A stretch of 6,593 bases of DNA, taken from positions 8,812 to 15,404 of the forward strand of contig NW_003314605.1 in NCBI RefSeq assembly GCF_000143415.4. The letters are read 5' to 3'. The notes under the pieces were generated by a model that was not told where the DNA came from, did no database searches, and saw nothing but the letters and a program-made list of their open reading frames with translations. The position numbers and the translations under genes are program-made. Numbering within the stretch: the first letter of the stretch is position 1; each line of letters starts with the position of its first letter. The stretch comes from Selaginella moellendorffii. Lineage: Eukaryota > Plantae > Lycopodiophyta. Shown here one piece after another: positions 1 to 5,394 of the stretch.

Positions 1-669
1 ATATAATTAATAGTAAAACATTCATTTCATTTTGTATACTTCCAAGGTTTTTTTTTTACAATACTATTTGTAATACTAGTGTGTCTTTTTTTTCTATCTT
101 TACCATTTCAAAATATATTTCATAGTAGTTTAAGGCCATGATATTGCAATATATTGCAAGAGTGTATATACTGTTGTACTGATTGTTGCCACTATTTCCA
201 CCAAAAGCTAGAAATAAATATGGCATTTCTTGAAAGTCACGAAATTGTAATTTTTTAAAACAAATAGGGGGGCATTCTTTTTCACCTAAATTGTTGCATC
301 TTTTATCATTTCATTTATCTCCAATATATGATCATTATTCTCATTATCCTCTTTTTCCATCTTTTATATGTTTTGAATGTGTTGTGCAATGGGATGAATA
401 TTGCAGCTCCTAGTCCTTGAATTACTACCATGAGGAGAAAGATTTCAAGAGTTGAAACTACCAACATTAGAACCATTTATTTTATGTTTTGACGAACTTA
501 AATAAAATAATATATAATAAATATTTAAATTCTTGGACAAGAAGCCTCCTCTAAAATAGTTTTATCCATATAAAATGTAGAGAGTTATGAAAATATAGTA
601 TAAAGTTAGGTTTTCTATAACCTTAATTTTTTAAAATTTATAATATTTGTATTAAATTACAATTGAAAA

Positions 670-713
670 TTGAGCTCAACTCGCGAGCTCAACTTTCCAG
701 CTCATGAGCTCAA
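670..713. repeat. Cluster of GAGCTC-containing palindromes/short direct repeats
   Basis: GAGCTC at 672, 685 and 706. GAGCTCAACT occurs twice (672-681, 685-694). Palindromes TTGAGCTCAA (670-679), CTCGCGAG (680-687) and AGCTCATGAGCT (699-710). Confidence 0.6.
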
Positions 714-725
714 AAGTGGTCCACG

Positions 726-790
726 CTCCTCCAAGTGGTTGGAGGTGTGGTTAAGTGACTAAAGTAAAATGGAAAATTTAGTCGCTTACA
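726..790 (+). repeat. 5' LTR remnant (U5 end)
   Basis: CTCCTCCAAG...GTCGCTTACA matches 5330-5394 at 62/65 positions (A767/G5371, C783/T5387, C785/T5389). It ends in CA directly before the PBS. Similarity stops abruptly upstream of 726. Confidence 0.85.
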
Positions 791-793
791 ATT

Positions 794-805
794 TGGTATC
801 GGAGC
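794..805 (+). promoter_or_regulatory. Primer binding site, tRNA-iMet type
   Basis: TGGTATCGGAGC starts 3 nt (ATT) after the LTR-terminal CA. It is an 11/12 match to the canonical plant TGGTATCAGAGC, and the A>G at 801 would still give a G.U pair with the tRNA. Confidence 0.87.
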
Positions 806-1147
806 TGTTCCTTAGTCCGACTCTTATTGGTGGCGAAGTATATCACCGCTTGTATTGGAATCGGAAGGTCCTAGATATGGACCTATCCTCGAGGCGTAGC
901 ATAAATTGCTTATGTTGCGATATAGTAAATCAATGTCGTAAATGGGAATGCTCATTGTTAGGAGGCCATCATTGGGACACCCAAACACTCTAGAACACCA
1001 GGAGGTGGTGTTTCGTGTCGCAAGGACAATAGATAAGGCCCAAGGGACTAAGTTTCTAGCGAATGATGGATAGTAGATGTTATCCAAATGTCCAAGGTTG
1101 TGGAGACAGGAGAAGATTGTCTACCCGAATTGGACAAAGCCAAAAAC

Positions 1148-1167
1148 AAAAAAAAAAAAAAAAAAAA
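1148..1167 (+). repeat. Poly(A)20 mononucleotide tract
   Basis: 20 consecutive A, flanked by the inverted repeat GCCAAA (1139-1144) / TTTGGC (1169-1174). Confidence 0.95.
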
Positions 1168-2114
1168 GTTTGGCAAGGCTAGTGATGGGCATGTAAAGGC
1201 CCATAAGCAACAACGTTAATCCCAATGTGTAAGATTATAAGGTGAGCATGCCCAAGATTGAGGAACCACTCCCTAGGCTATCGGGTAGGTTCATCCCTAA
1301 GAATATTTGCTAAGGCATAGTAAAATGTGCAAAGTTATCCTCCTAGTCTGGAGGAGAATAACCAAAGAAAACATATGGGGCCAAAAAGCAAGTAGTATTG
1401 GGATAGAACTAAACCATAGAAATCGAAGGGCATATCCAACGGTGGTTATGCAAGTTAGGAGTGGAGAATCAAGACGGTGCTCGAGGATGTTGTTGCTAGC
1501 AACCATGATGCCATGGAGAGTCTAAAATATGGAATTGTCCATGTTAGACTATATAGCAACTATAAAGCTTGCGAAAGGGGAGGCTTTAGCAAGCTAAGGA
1601 ACAGAGTTCCTTCAAGGTTCCCAAAGACGATTCTAGGTAACTTAGTACCTAGAAAGGCCAAGTGTAAATGGTTCATGGAACGCGCGAAATCAGAGTGGCG
1701 CAACAGAAGTGTGGTCTTGAAGCTTGCCATGAGGCAAGGCTATCAAGGGTAGGGAAGTAGTTCCCAAGTGTTCAAAGAGAGGGCTTTGAACAAAAGTCGA
1801 TGGTCAAGGACTTTCACACTTATGCAGGAACCATGTTACAGTGGTCGGAGGACTTGCCAAGCGAGATTGGCAAGTCGGGGAAACAAATACCTTAGTTGAA
1901 GGTGATAACTTCAAAAAAGGGTGGGCCATAGGGCCAAGCATGGAGGAGTCCATGCATGATCACAGACTTGTCAGGTGAGAGGACTTGGCAGTGTGGAGGA
2001 ACTAGGTTCCTAAGCTGTGATCTGTAGCGTGCATTAAATATAAGTTGGTGCACCAGCGTGGGGAGTCACGCCAGGCATCCGGTGTGATGCCATCCGTAGA
2101 TGCATATACGGAGG

Positions 2115-2156
2115 TTGGGTTCGAGTCCCGACCCTCTAGTGCTTGGGTTCGAGTCC
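2115..2156 (+). repeat. Duplicated 14-mer TTGGGTTCGAGTCC containing a Pol III B-box / tRNA T-arm-like motif
   Basis: Exact copies at 2115-2128 and 2143-2156. Each contains GGTTCGAGTCC and folds as a stem with a 7-nt TTCGAGT loop. Confidence 0.7.
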
Positions 2157-2160
2157 TAAA

Positions 2161-2520
2161 TCACTAGGGCATGGTGATGGTTTGGAATATGAGGACACTC
2201 ATTTTTCGGTGGTTATGGACTCTCAGTGTGGAGACTGGTTTAGGCACACCGCCAAGTGAGGGATGCCTCAGAGTCGTGATGCATGGTTAGATTGCTTAGC
2301 GTGGCTCAGCATATCTAACTTGAACACTTTGGTGTGAGTGGCACCAAGGATATGGTGAATGAGATGGGGACACCCAGTCTCAGTTGCTATGGACCCTTGG
2401 CCAGAAGGGCTGGCTTGGGCACACCGCCAAGTGTGGGGGATGCCCCTGGGGTCGTAGTTAACAAGTTAAAGGTTTGGAAGACCTAGTACCTATTGGCAAA
2501 CCTGTTAAGGTGCCGAGGTG
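2161..2520 (+). repeat. Diverged tandem duplication, period ~175-180 bp
   Basis: 2189-2280 aligns with 2364-2458. Exact 16-bp core GGCACACCGCCAAGTG at 2243-2258 and 2418-2433. Similar unit starts lie near 2161 and 2341, with a possible third at ~2524 (TCACTAGG). Confidence 0.8.
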
Positions 2521-3616
2521 AGATCACTAGGTGATCTTGTGGCTAAATAAGGACAAGGTCCTTGTTTGGGTTAAGGAATAAGGTTCCTAGTTCAAAGTGT
2601 TAATTTGAGCTATTGATGATGGTGTGGCTTGGTCAAGGTGACCAAGTGGGAAAAGCACCTTAGGGCAATGAGCTATGTCATTGCGATGGCATAATGTGTC
2701 CACGGAAAGTAATCTCTAAAGAGACCCATGGGAGGGTCACAAAGTTGGGCCGTGGATAAAGCCCACAACAGAAGATGCTAAAGAGACTTACTAGGGGTGA
2801 ACACTCTAGTCTTGGCAAAGCAAAGCCTTTGCTATGGAATCAAAAGAATACCTCAAGGAGGGAGGTAGAGATTCAGTGTTGCTTGGTGCAACAATCAACG
2901 GATAGGAGCAAAAGATGAGTGGCCAAGATAGGGCCGTGGAATCCTTTGGAAGGAATCCAAGTGGCAAAGTTAGGCAAGGAACACTAATGTGTTGGACGCT
3001 AACAAATTGCGGGAAAGGAAGTGTGTTTCCAAGGATGGATTCCGAATTGTTCCAATTTGGCGAAAGTGGAAGCTCCAAGGGAGGGAGCGGTAAGGTAGCC
3101 AAATGATAGGGCCATGGACAGCCCTAGCACAAAGTATGATAAATGGAACTTAGTGCCCAAGGTGGCACGAAATAAAAGAGAGGATGATGGTGCCCTCAAG
3201 TAAAGAACTTCCTAGGATGGGGAAGTGGAGTTGCACAATATGTGCAATGCAAGGTGTTGGAGACACCTAGAAAATTGACTTCCAGAAGTCAAAGAATAAA
3301 AGTTCCAAGGTGCAAATGTTCAATAGATGGAAATTGAGACTACTCGAGAAAGAGTAGTGGGATTGACTTCGAGAAGGGTCTCTAAGAGGTTTAGCGAAAA
3401 CTAAACTAATAAAAGGAGAGAACCACTACATGTGGTCCAATTAGTCTTTAAGTTGGAGAGACTACCTTCCTTAGAGGATGGACAAGGCATGGTGAGCCTT
3501 CGGTGTCAAATCATAGACAAATATTGGCCAGGGGCTAAAGATGGAAACGGTAATACATATAGGTGTTACTTTATAAAAGGGATTACCGTTCGATGAGGAC
3601 ATCGAACTTCGTCTAT

Positions 3617-3627
3617 GGGTGGTGAAG
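3617..3627 (+). promoter_or_regulatory. Candidate degenerate polypurine tract
   Basis: GGGTGGTGAAG is followed by T and then TGTGAG at 3629, and preceded by GAGGAC (3595-3600). This layout recalls the 3' ends of plant Ty3/gypsy elements, but the tract is interrupted by pyrimidines, so the call is tentative. Confidence 0.33.
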
Positions 3628-3846
3628 TTGTGAGACACAAATTCCCTAGGCCCCAAAGTGGAGCCGGAAGGGTGCCATGTGGTAGTGGCCGAAGCGAAAG
3701 CCAAACGAATGTAACATGTTTGGCCCAAAAGTTCCGACTTGAAAGGTCGAGAGCGGGAGTGGAACTTCTAACGAAGTGCTCGAGGAATGAGCACGAAATG
3801 AGCAATAAACGAGGCTCCAAAAAGAGACCCAAAAGGACTAACACAT

Positions 3847-3856
3847 GACACGTGGA
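3847..3856 (+). promoter_or_regulatory. G-box/ABRE-like motif GACACGTGGA (second identical copy at 5221-5230)
   Basis: CACGTG core. The same 10-mer occurs twice within the candidate 3' LTR. Motif match only. Confidence 0.25.
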
Positions 3857-3857
3857 A

Positions 3858-4035
3858 GTGTCCGAGATGGACCCAAGATGGACCCGAGTTGGAATCCGAA
3901 CTGGAGTCCGAGAAGGACCCGAGATAGACCTGAGTTGGAGTCCGAACTAGAGTCCGAGAAGGACCCGAGATGGACCCGAGATGGAGTCCGAGATGGACTT
4001 GAGATGGAGTCCGAGATGGACCCGAGATGGAGTCC
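3858..4035 (+). repeat. Minisatellite of 11-bp (GACCCGAGATG) and 12-bp (GAGTCCGAGATG) units
   Basis: 15 complete units plus a partial one that runs into the N gap. A higher-order 46-bp unit (11+11+12+12) occurs at 3870-3915 and 3916-3961. Confidence 0.95.
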
Positions 4036-4898
4036 NNNNNNNNNNNNNNNNNNNNNNNNNNNNNNNNNNNNNNNNNNNNNNNNNNNNNNNNNNNNNNNNN
4101 NNNNNNNNNNNNNNNNNNNNNNNNNNNNNNNNNNNNNNNNNNNNNNNNNNNNNNNNNNNNNNNNNNNNNNNNNNNNNNNNNNNNNNNNNNNNNNNNNNNN
4201 NNNNNNNNNNNNNNNNNNNNNNNNNNNNNNNNNNNNNNNNNNNNNNNNNNNNNNNNNNNNNNNNNNNNNNNNNNNNNNNNNNNNNNNNNNNNNNNNNNNN
4301 NNNNNNNNNNNNNNNNNNNNNNNNNNNNNNNNNNNNNNNNNNNNNNNNNNNNNNNNNNNNNNNNNNNNNNNNNNNNNNNNNNNNNNNNNNNNNNNNNNNN
4401 NNNNNNNNNNNNNNNNNNNNNNNNNNNNNNNNNNNNNNNNNNNNNNNNNNNNNNNNNNNNNNNNNNNNNNNNNNNNNNNNNNNNNNNNNNNNNNNNNNNN
4501 NNNNNNNNNNNNNNNNNNNNNNNNNNNNNNNNNNNNNNNNNNNNNNNNNNNNNNNNNNNNNNNNNNNNNNNNNNNNNNNNNNNNNNNNNNNNNNNNNNNN
4601 NNNNNNNNNNNNNNNNNNNNNNNNNNNNNNNNNNNNNNNNNNNNNNNNNNNNNNNNNNNNNNNNNNNNNNNNNNNNNNNNNNNNNNNNNNNNNNNNNNNN
4701 NNNNNNNNNNNNNNNNNNNNNNNNNNNNNNNNNNNNNNNNNNNNNNNNNNNNNNNNNNNNNNNNNNNNNNNNNNNNNNNNNNNNNNNNNNNNNNNNNNNN
4801 NNNNNNNNNNNNNNNNNNNNNNNNNNNNNNNNNNNNNNNNNNNNNNNNNNNNNNNNNNNNNNNNNNNNNNNNNNNNNNNNNNNNNNNNNNNNNNNNNN
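4036..4898. other. Assembly gap (863 N)
   Basis: The run of N begins inside the minisatellite, which probably broke the assembly. Confidence 0.99.
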
Positions 4899-5329
4899 TA
4901 GGACCGTGGGACTTAGTGGTTAGGCCTGTGGGCCTCGATCCAGTGGCAGTGTTGGTGAACACGGCCATGGGCAGAAAGGGACTTGGTGAAGATCGGAAAA
5001 GGGATATTGGGGAAGGCTAATCCCCATGTCTGTGGGCATCCTAAGGATGCTAAGGAGTGGATATAGAATGATCACTCATGGATGGATGGCCCAGTTCTTG
5101 AGAAATGGGACTATAATGCAGGTGGTGTTAGACCACCGGTGTGACCAAGGTAAAGGGGCATGGCCTTAGCGTAACGGGCTGATATGTCGGTGGTACCTTG
5201 GGGTGTCGGTCATAGGATCGGACACGTGGAGCACTTGGATCAAGTGCAAAGGTCAGAGTGGCGGGGACGCCATTCTCGGGGCTAGCAAGCCCAAGTCTGA
5301 AATAGGACTTATGGAGGTTGTGAGTGAGA

Positions 5330-5394
5330 CTCCTCCAAGTGGTTGGAGGTGTGGTTAAGTGACTAAAGTAGAATGGAAAATTTAGTTGTTTACA
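5330..5394 (+). repeat. 3' end of 3' LTR
   Basis: Second copy of the 65-bp repeat ending TTACA. It is not followed by a PBS, and composition switches to AT-rich flank afterwards. Confidence 0.87.

What the first reader, a model, noticed from the sequence alone, without database searches (positions are those of the whole stretch)
726..5394. A protein-free LTR element built almost entirely as a chain of short RNA hairpins
Seen: from the LTR end through the internal region, and again after the gap, short inverted repeats follow one another with only a few nt between them. I count roughly 90-100 by eye, including 4-5 bp stems and G.U pairs. Perfect examples: TTCTAGGTA-acttag-TACCTAGAA (1631-1654), TGTTCAAAG-agaggg-CTTTGAACA (1769-1792), GACTTGCCAA-gcgaga-TTGGCAAGTC (1851-1876), GCATGGA-ggag-TCCATGC (1938-1955), CTTGGTCA-agg-TGACCAAG (2628-2646), TTGCACA-ata-TGTGCAA (3231-3247), ACTACTC-gagaaa-GAGTAGT (3339-3358), GTTCGATG-agga-CATCGAAC (3588-3607), GCACTTG-gat-CAAGTGC (5231-5247). 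The stems are mostly unrelated in sequence, so this is not a tandem repeat. The imperfect pairs I noticed are mostly G.T on the + (PBS-sense) strand, though my search favoured these. Known: LARDs such as barley Sukkula are non-coding LTR elements with a structured internal domain. Inference: this is a non-autonomous family whose multi-kilobase RNA has been shaped into many local hairpins. Possible roles are helper-particle packaging, RNA stability, or compaction with stems too short for Dicer-like cleavage.
Basis: partly seen in the sequence, partly recalled or inferred. Interest (0 to 1): 0.9.

Follow-up and report, generated by a model that had tools for sequence, protein, structure and literature searches.

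The report
Non-coding plant retroelement, dense RNA hairpin chain
This is one decayed copy of a very abundant, protein-free plant LTR retrotransposon whose sense-strand RNA carries five to ten times more short hairpins than chance allows, which points to a genomic RNA shaped by selection for local structure.

Summary
All nine quoted hairpins are at the stated places. The readable element (726-4035, 4899-5394) has far more short perfect hairpins than dinucleotide shuffles: 67 vs 14.7 stems of 5 bp or more, and 33 vs 3.4 of 6 bp or more. The flanks show no excess. The pairing belongs to the + (PBS-sense) strand: stems that need G.U wobble are 7-12x enriched on + and at chance on -. Family-majority letters stabilise the folds, so the structure is ancestral and this copy is decaying. 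An internal duplication keeps a shared fold through 6 two-sided changes.

No Pfam domain is left. The family is a major genome component in organism A and occurs in a second species. It is almost silent in two RNA-seq runs.

The 65-nt repeat has no target-site duplication and is probably the stump of a roughly 1.8-kb LTR starting near 3629. That makes this a LARD-type element with a 2.8-kb interior.

The role of the hairpins is inferred, not shown; candidates are packaging, compaction or escape from silencing. Continuity across the gap cannot be shown. This scan has at least twelve other first-reader notes of the same kind in this genome.

The parts
726..790 (+). Terminal direct repeat, copy 1. 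It is the end of the 5' LTR (ends ...TTACA), probably the stump of a longer LTR, and holds an 18-nt perfect hairpin at 728-745.
   Evidence: It is 95% identical to 5330-5394. Family contigs diverge right after 790 (44 loose ends with low agreement). No target-site duplication: CCACG before it vs TTAGT after 5394.
794..805 (+). Primer-binding-site-like 12-mer, 3 nt after the repeat. It matches 11 of 12 letters of the initiator-Met tRNA PBS commonly reported for plant LTR retrotransposons (consensus from my own knowledge).
   Evidence: Read directly from the sequence. It sets + as the RNA sense strand.
791..3628 (+). Non-coding interior, the densest part of the hairpin chain.
   Evidence: Stems of 6 bp or more: 32 vs 3.2 in shuffles (z 19). 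Wobble-containing stems of 7 bp or more: 27 vs 3.5 on +, 7 vs 3.5 on -. No Pfam hits. No ORF above 126 aa.
2115..2170 (+). Two tandem 28-nt units, each with a tRNA T-arm / B-box-like GGTTCGAGTCC hairpin.
   Evidence: ARAGORN finds no tRNA and Rfam finds nothing.
2189..2267 (+). Internal duplication, copy 1 of a structured module.
   Evidence: It is 73% identical to 2364-2444. The shared fold has 34 pairs, of which 6 change on both sides and 6 on one side through G.U.
2364..2444 (+). Internal duplication, copy 2 of the structured module.
3588..3607 (+). Perfect 8-bp hairpin with an AGGA tetraloop, just upstream of a purine tract.
   Evidence: Other first-reader notes in this genome describe a hairpin of this kind just before the PPT (unchecked).
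3617..3627 (+). Candidate polypurine tract (GGGTGGTGAAG).
   Evidence: Read from the sequence. Inference only.
3629..5394 (+). Probable full 3' LTR. It starts TGTGAGAC, ends TTACA, and is about 1.77 kb including the gap estimate.
   Evidence: Summed contig depth from 3552 on is about 1.7x (X1) and 4.3x (X4) that of 764-3551. One contig joins an LTR end to letters like 3628-3650 and then to 3651 onward. Hairpin excess persists here, 6 vs 0.8. Likely, not proven.
3860..4035 (+). Tandem array (periods 11, 23 and 46 nt) that runs into the gap.
   Evidence: It has the highest depth of the stretch and many length-variant joints.
4036..4898 (.). Assembly gap of estimated length. Its content is unknown.
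   Evidence: No bridging contig was seen.
5311..5329 (+). Second purine-rich stretch with a TTGTGAG motif, just before the terminal repeat. It resembles 3613-3636. It is the alternative PPT and LTR start if the LTR is short.
   Evidence: Read from the sequence.
5330..5394 (+). Terminal direct repeat, copy 2, the end of the 3' LTR.
   Evidence: Depth falls to flank level after 5394.

Best explanation
The window holds one old, 5'-truncated copy of a very high-copy, protein-free LTR retrotransposon of the LARD type. Helper proteins would replicate it: transcription from the LTR, priming by initiator-Met tRNA at 794-805, then packaging and reverse transcription by a partner's Gag-Pol.

Its sense-strand genomic RNA is built as beads on a string. 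Short stems of 5-11 bp with 3-8-nt loops follow each other about every 45-60 nt, joined by purine-rich linkers that cannot pair with one another.

This architecture was present in the family's progenitor. Selection on the + strand RNA most likely maintained it while the family was active. In this dead copy it is eroding through deamination-type changes.

The most likely benefit is to the element itself: compact, nuclease-resistant and RISC-inaccessible RNA, and/or many binding sites for the helper's nucleocapsid. The stems stay too short to be diced. The structure and its strand are shown here. The selection is inferred from three lines of evidence. The benefit is conjecture.
For: - Hairpin excess: 5-10x over dinucleotide shuffles, absent from the flanks.
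- Strand: stems of 7 bp or more that need 1-2 wobble pairs number 30 vs 4.4 on +, and 8 vs 3.9 on -. At 8 bp or more the counts are 15 vs 1.2 on + and 1 vs 1.2 on -. Internal mismatches are 13 G:T vs 2 A:C, against 2.95 and 2.26 in shuffles.
- This copy's own near-fixed differences from the family are symmetric per site, about 17 G-to-A and 8 C-to-T on 1.7x more G than C. Decay after insertion therefore cannot explain the asymmetry.
- Thirty-three family-majority letters, tested one at a time, stabilise local folds: mean ddG -0.64 vs +0.10 +/- 0.29 for same-type random changes, 0 of 300.
- The internal duplication keeps a common fold of 34 pairs, with 6 two-sided changes, 6 one-sided changes through G.U and 95.5% of cells paired. 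Slid controls give 0-1. Three of the two-sided changes lie in a helix closing about 65 nt.
- No protein-domain remnant.
- The family is huge: 108,037 contig pieces in one DNA run, and it is present in a second species.
- LARDs and TRIMs are described as specifying well-conserved RNA secondary structures (PMC7215508).
Against: - No other copy could be aligned, so family-wide covariation is untested.
- The duplication test rests on two sequences, and several two-sided changes are A-U/G-C swaps that paired deamination could produce.
- A strand-biased mutation pressure during the RNA/cDNA cycle, such as C-to-U on the + strand, could add G.U pairs without selection.
- Two unrelated retroelement-like contigs used as controls also show a 2-4x hairpin excess. 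Some excess may therefore be common in retroelements.
- RNA-seq shows almost no transcripts, 8 and 9 reads of 9.2 million each.
- Loop composition adds nothing beyond base composition.
Confidence: 0.6

Rival explanations
1. Mutational by-product. Short template switches by reverse transcriptase or DNA polymerase copy a few bases from the opposite or nascent strand. They create inverted repeats and keep them complementary in a sequence free of coding constraint. The hairpins would have no function.
For: The mechanism is documented and can mimic compensatory change (PMC8794818). The interior is unconstrained non-coding sequence. Control retroelement contigs L002 and L004 also carry excess hairpins. 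Many stems are perfect.
Against: Template switches make Watson-Crick arms that should decay symmetrically. Here wobble stems are enriched 7-12x on the + strand only, and A:C mismatches stay at chance. Three two-sided changes sit in a long-range helix closing about 65 nt, which is hard to make by local switches. About 50 excess hairpins in 3.8 kb with almost no sequence-related arms elsewhere would need a very high event rate.
Confidence: 0.2
2. A former gag-pol element decayed beyond recognition. The hairpins would be incidental to degraded coding sequence, and 'non-coding family' would overstate the case.
For: Other first-reader notes in this genome mention hairpin-tiled elements with a decayed pol (unchecked). 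The + strand purine richness is typical of retroelement sense strands.
Against: No Pfam match at E up to 1 in the 20 longest stop-free pieces on both strands, apart from one stray 0.09 hit. Stops are dense in all frames. Decay of coding sequence does not create hairpins.
Confidence: 0.1
3. DNA-level palindromes, such as cruciforms, sites for dimeric DNA-binding proteins, or symmetric methylation contexts, rather than RNA structure.
For: MFE z-scores are similar on both strands (-2.0 and -2.3), as expected for any Watson-Crick inverted repeat.
Against: The strong + strand-only wobble enrichment and the G:T over A:C bias have no meaning in duplex DNA. The stems share no common sequence.
Confidence: 0.05

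Closest known systems
LARDs (large retrotransposon derivatives, e.g. barley Sukkula)
   Same: LTR-bounded, with PBS and PPT, a multi-kilobase interior with no gag-pol, and high copy number with presumed dependence on a helper. The group is described as specifying well-conserved RNA secondary structures (PMC7215508, citing the 2004 description, which I could not open).
   Different: No sequence relation was tested. The LTR here is about 1.8 kb at most (Sukkula about 4.4 kb, from memory), and this copy has only a 65-nt stump at the 5' side. I did not find the quantified features of this element described for LARDs in the papers I could search: 5-10x excess of 5-11-bp hairpins, a + strand wobble signature, and predominantly short-range pairing.
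TRIMs and SMARTs (miniature non-autonomous LTR elements)
   Same: Non-coding, with PBS and PPT. If the 65-nt repeat were the whole LTR, the LTR would be in their size range.
   Different: The interior is 2.8-4.5 kb rather than a few hundred bases. A 65-nt LTR could hardly hold U3, R and U5. There is no target-site duplication.
Retrozymes and Cassandra (non-autonomous LTR elements carrying a functional RNA in the LTR)
   Same: Plant non-autonomous LTR elements whose biology centres on a structured RNA.
   Different: Rfam finds no hammerhead ribozyme and no 5S rRNA in the window. The structure here is a long chain of unrelated hairpins, not one defined RNA motif.
Retroviral packaging signals (stem-loops with exposed purines bound by nucleocapsid)
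   Same: Short stem-loops with G/A-rich loops on the genomic sense RNA.
   Different: Those signals are 100-400 nt near the 5' end. Here the pattern covers the whole RNA. No binding was tested, and the loop composition is explained by base composition.

Membership tests
LTR retrotransposon | Two long terminal direct repeats | tested here: inconclusive
   Only 65 nt repeat (726-790 and 5330-5394, 95%). The 5' copy looks truncated.
LTR retrotransposon | Primer binding site complementary to a tRNA 3' end just inside the 5' LTR | tested here: met
   The 12-mer at 794-805, 3 nt after the repeat, matches 11 of 12 letters of the initiator-Met PBS. The consensus is recalled from knowledge and was not retrieved.
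LTR retrotransposon | Polypurine tract just upstream of the 3' LTR, and TG...CA LTR ends | tested here: inconclusive
   There are two candidates. One is 3617-3627 followed by TG at 3629. The other is 5311-5329 followed by a repeat that starts CT. Both readings end in CA at 5394.
LTR retrotransposon | Target-site duplication of 4-6 bp | tested here: not met
   CCACG before 726 vs TTAGT after 5394. This fits truncation or rearrangement of this copy.
LARD | No gag, pol or env coding capacity in the interior | tested here: met
   Longest stop-free piece is 126 aa. No Pfam family at E up to 1 except one stray hit at 0.09. The gap of about 0.86 kb is unread.
LARD | Large size, with sizeable LTRs and a multi-kilobase conserved interior | tested here: inconclusive
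   The element spans 4.67 kb in this window. The LTR is about 1.77 kb under the favoured reading (depth and joint). Conservation shows as 108,037 contig pieces at 88-100% likeness.
LARD | Conserved RNA secondary structure of the interior | tested here: met
   Hairpin excess, family-majority letters stabilising the folds, and an internal paralogue keeping the fold. Family-wide covariation was not tested.
LARD | Mobilised in trans by an autonomous partner sharing LTR, PBS and PPT | not testable with these tools
   No other locus of this genome could be fetched.
TRIM | Total length under about 1.5 kb with a tiny interior | tested here: not met
   The interior is at least 2.8 kb.
Retrozyme | Hammerhead ribozyme in the LTRs | tested here: not met
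   Rfam E-value scan of the whole window gave only a sub-threshold mir-306 match at E 0.93.
Cassandra | 5S rRNA-like sequence in the LTRs | tested here: not met
   No 5S match in Rfam.
tRNA-derived SINE or tRNA gene | Recognisable tRNA fold or A plus B boxes at the 5' end | tested here: not met
   ARAGORN finds none. Only B-box-like GGTTCGAGTCC occurs, twice, 1.4 kb inside the element.

The most novel reading that the evidence does not exclude
Several unrelated non-autonomous LTR families in this plant genome have converged on the same design: a multi-kilobase genomic RNA made of a near-continuous necklace of short hairpins joined by purine linkers. On this reading it is an adaptation of protein-free parasites, either to out-compete helpers for nucleocapsid binding and packaging or to hide from RNA silencing. 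This would make structure, not coding, the selected phenotype of a percent-scale fraction of a genome.
Probability: 0.3. Interest if true: 0.8.

Novelty: new variant of a known kind. Interest (0 to 1): 0.6.

Why it matters
Non-coding LTR elements can fill a large share of plant genomes, yet it is poorly understood what makes one family succeed without any protein. This copy gives a clean, quantitative signature of sense-strand RNA structure in such a family. It has a 5-10x hairpin excess, wobble pairs on the + strand only, and compensatory change in a paralogous module. The family is abundant enough for direct tests, with tens of thousands of natural copies for covariation analysis and an RNA suited to chemical probing. 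If selection is confirmed, these elements would be among the longest structured selfish RNAs known. They would offer a system to ask how helper Gag chooses its cargo and how structure interacts with RNA silencing.

Tried and rejected
- Fetching other copies by DNA. Exact 20-mer scans of viral contigs, metagenome contigs and bacterial/archaeal genomes gave only chance matches. BLAST shows no similarity beyond the 20-mer.
- Fetching copies through a spurious minus-strand ORF in the protein collection gave no hit.
- Rfam gave nothing above threshold. ARAGORN found no tRNA.
- Loop composition: the hairpin loops are 71% purine and 8% C. I rejected this as evidence because the unpaired letters of shuffled sequences have the same make-up.
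- MFE z-scores cannot tell the strands apart. The wobble test was needed for that.
- K-mer analysis found no shared stem motif beyond the tandem array.
- The first small count of internal mismatches (6 G:T vs 1 A:C) was not significant until the threshold was widened and calibrated.
- The 2004 LARD paper could not be opened.
- RNA-seq reads were too few (17 in all) to show a strand, a start or an end.


Full report
**What is there**

The window has AT-rich flanks (28-31% GC). Between them lies a block at 726-5394 with 41-51% GC and a strong purine excess on the + strand (GC skew +0.2 to +0.3). An assembly gap at 4036-4898 interrupts it.

The only long direct repeat is 65 nt, 726-790 against 5330-5394, at 95% identity. 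Three bases after the first copy lies a 12-mer at 794-805. It matches 11 of 12 positions of the initiator-Met tRNA primer-binding site usually reported for plant LTR retrotransposons. That consensus is from my own knowledge.

The longest stop-free piece is 126 aa. The 20 longest stop-free pieces on both strands give no Pfam match at E up to 1, apart from one stray 0.09 hit. ARAGORN and Rfam find nothing.

**Is the hairpin chain real?**

Yes. All nine quoted examples are at the stated coordinates. The table counts perfect Watson-Crick stems with 3-8-nt loops against 200 dinucleotide-preserving shuffles.

| Region | Stem length | Observed | Shuffles |
|---|---|---|---|
| 791-4035 | 5 bp or more | 67 | 14.7 +/- 4.0 |
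| 791-4035 | 6 bp or more | 33 | 3.4 |
| 791-4035 | 7 bp or more | 13 | 1.0 |
| 4899-5329 | 5 bp or more | 9 | 1.7 |

The two flanks show no excess. Sixty-eight non-overlapping perfect hairpins lie a median of 44 nt apart.

Folding energies agree. In 120-nt windows the mean z is -2.0 inside the element and -0.2 to -0.7 outside. In 600-nt folds the element differs from shuffles on three measures:
- Energy is -33.9 vs -27.9 +/- 0.55 kcal per 100 nt.
- Pairs spanning 30 nt or less make up 66% vs 44%.
- Hairpin loops number 2.87 vs 1.89 per 100 nt.

The solid excess is about 50 perfect stems and a marked shift to short-range pairing. The stems are unrelated to one another.

**Which strand, and DNA or RNA?**

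MFE z-scores cannot tell, because any Watson-Crick inverted repeat folds on both strands. Wobble pairs can. The table shows stems that need one or two G.U pairs.

| Stem length | + strand | - strand |
|---|---|---|
| 7 bp or more | 30 vs 4.4 +/- 1.9 | 8 vs 3.9 +/- 2.1 |
| 8 bp or more | 15 vs 1.2 | 1 vs 1.2 |

- Single internal mismatches in longer stems are 13 G:T against 2 A:C, where shuffles give 2.95 and 2.26.
- The flanks show no such bias. Two unrelated retroelement-like contigs show a symmetric one.
- This copy's own near-fixed differences from the family are about as frequent per G as per C. Decay after insertion would therefore have made A:C as often as G:T.
- The pairing is thus a property of the single-stranded + molecule, which is the PBS-sense genomic RNA. 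Duplex-DNA explanations are excluded.

**Is it a family property?**

One read-laying run gave the following:
- 108,037 contig pieces of one DNA run of organism A matched at 88-100% likeness.
- 2,427 pieces of a run of a second species also matched.
- Depth falls to flank level outside 726-5394.
- Two RNA-seq runs of organism A gave only 8 and 9 reads out of 9.2 million each, in both orientations. The family is essentially silent there.

At 33 well-supported sites this copy differs from the family majority. I tested each family letter on its own, without building any consensus. On average they stabilise the local fold: mean ddG is -0.64 kcal/mol, against +0.10 +/- 0.29 for random substitutions of the same kinds (0 of 300). 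The progenitor was therefore more structured, and this copy is eroding, mostly by G-to-A and C-to-T changes.

**Evidence for maintenance**

The segment 2189-2267 is an old duplicate of 2364-2444 at 73% identity. Both fold into the same multi-branch module. On 34 shared pairs:
- 95.5% of cells are paired.
- 6 pairs changed on both sides.
- 6 pairs changed on one side and stayed paired through G.U.
- Sliding the partners by 1-3 columns gives 0-1 two-sided changes.
- Three of the two-sided changes lie in a helix that closes about 65 nt.

This confirms an earlier first-reader note on the same window. The comparison involves only two sequences, and some A-U/G-C swaps could come from paired deamination. 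I therefore count it as supporting, not decisive.

**Anatomy correction**

The 65-nt repeat is unlikely to be a whole LTR, for these reasons:
- There is no target-site duplication.
- The 5' flank 600-725 is itself a lower-copy repeat. A contig of the second species covers 600-728 and then continues with letters found nowhere in the stretch.
- A 65-nt LTR could hardly hold a promoter, R and U5.

Three features sit at 3588-3636: a perfect AGGA-tetraloop hairpin (3588-3607), a purine tract (3617-3627) and a TG start (3629). Other first-reader notes in this genome describe such a hairpin just before the PPT. Summed depth from 3552 on is about 1.7x (organism A) and 4.3x (second species) that of the interior. 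One contig joins an LTR end to letters like 3628-3650 and then to 3651 onward.

I therefore favour, at about 0.65, the following layout:
- a 3' LTR at 3629-5394, about 1.77 kb with the gap estimate;
- a 2.8-kb interior;
- a 5' LTR cut down to its last 65 nt.

A second purine-rich stretch with TTGTGAG at 5311-5329 keeps a short-LTR reading alive. Either way the hairpin excess covers both parts.

**The gap**

No contig bridges 4035 to 4899. Family contigs continue after 4020 with further array-like letters that do not match 4899 onward. Continuity and length are unproven, and the two sides could even come from different copies of the family. Nothing here depends on a reading frame.

**How it most likely works**

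Shown: a non-coding LTR retroelement family of very high copy number, and a sense-strand RNA design of many short local stems that is ancestral to the family.

Inferred at about 0.6: selection on the RNA kept this design while the family was replicating with a helper's proteins.

Conjecture: the gain is compaction and protection of the RNA, poor access for RISC and stems too short for dicing, and/or many weak nucleocapsid sites that favour packaging.

The purine-rich linkers cannot pair with each other, which keeps pairing local. Their composition is not independent evidence, because shuffles give the same unpaired make-up.

**Rivals**

- Template switching can create and maintain hairpins without selection (PMC8794818). 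The two control retroelement contigs also have a 2-4x excess. But such arms should decay symmetrically, unlike the + strand-only wobble signal. I give this 0.2.
- A decayed gag-pol: 0.1.
- DNA-level palindromes: 0.05.

**Comparison with what is known**

The closest kind is the LARD group. [quoted passage not shown] I could not open the original description.

TRIM, Cassandra and retrozyme membership each fail a defining feature (size, 5S rRNA, hammerhead ribozyme).

I found no paper describing the quantified hairpin-chain architecture with a strand-specific wobble signature. I therefore rate it a new variant of a known kind. The scan's first readers have flagged the same kind of element at least twelve times elsewhere in this genome. 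Those notes are unchecked and are not independent support.

**Limits**

- No second copy could be fetched, so family-wide covariation remains to be done.

Noticed in passing
window 2115-2170: Two tandem 28-nt units each carry GGTTCGAGTCC, the tRNA T-arm / Pol III B-box consensus, folded as a T-arm-like hairpin. No tRNA was called by ARAGORN or Rfam. It may be a captured tRNA fragment.
   Followed up: partly
window 1142-1167: A 26-nt run of A lies inside the element. Reads appear cut there, and the depth of bin 1092-1255 is 3-4x lower than its neighbours, so this part varies among copies.
   Followed up: no
window 3860-4035: A tandem array (11/23/46-nt periods) abuts the assembly gap. It has the highest depth of the stretch in both species and many length-variant joints. 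It behaves like an expandable minisatellite inside the probable LTR and is the likely cause of the gap.
   Followed up: partly
window 600-728: The 5' flank, including a 13-nt tandem repeat at 673-704, is itself a lower-copy repeat. It is 97% conserved in a contig of the second species, which then continues with letters not found in the stretch. The element's left end is therefore not a clean insertion junction.
   Followed up: partly
window 5254-5283: A family sub-lineage (63 contigs in X1, 4 in X4) carries A...T where this copy has G...C in the stem of the hairpin at 5255-5276. The pair is kept, but both sites are CpG, so paired deamination could explain it.
   Followed up: partly
L002, L004, L005 (metagenome contigs): These are chance 20-mer hits. 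They turned out to be a gypsy-like coding retroelement family with its own 2-4x excess of 6-bp hairpins and a strand-symmetric wobble excess. Some hairpin enrichment may be common in retroelements.
   Followed up: partly
window 783, 785 vs 5387, 5389: Two of the three differences between the two 65-nt repeat copies are C/T at CpG sites. At 4.6% divergence, this is not a recent insertion.
   Followed up: no
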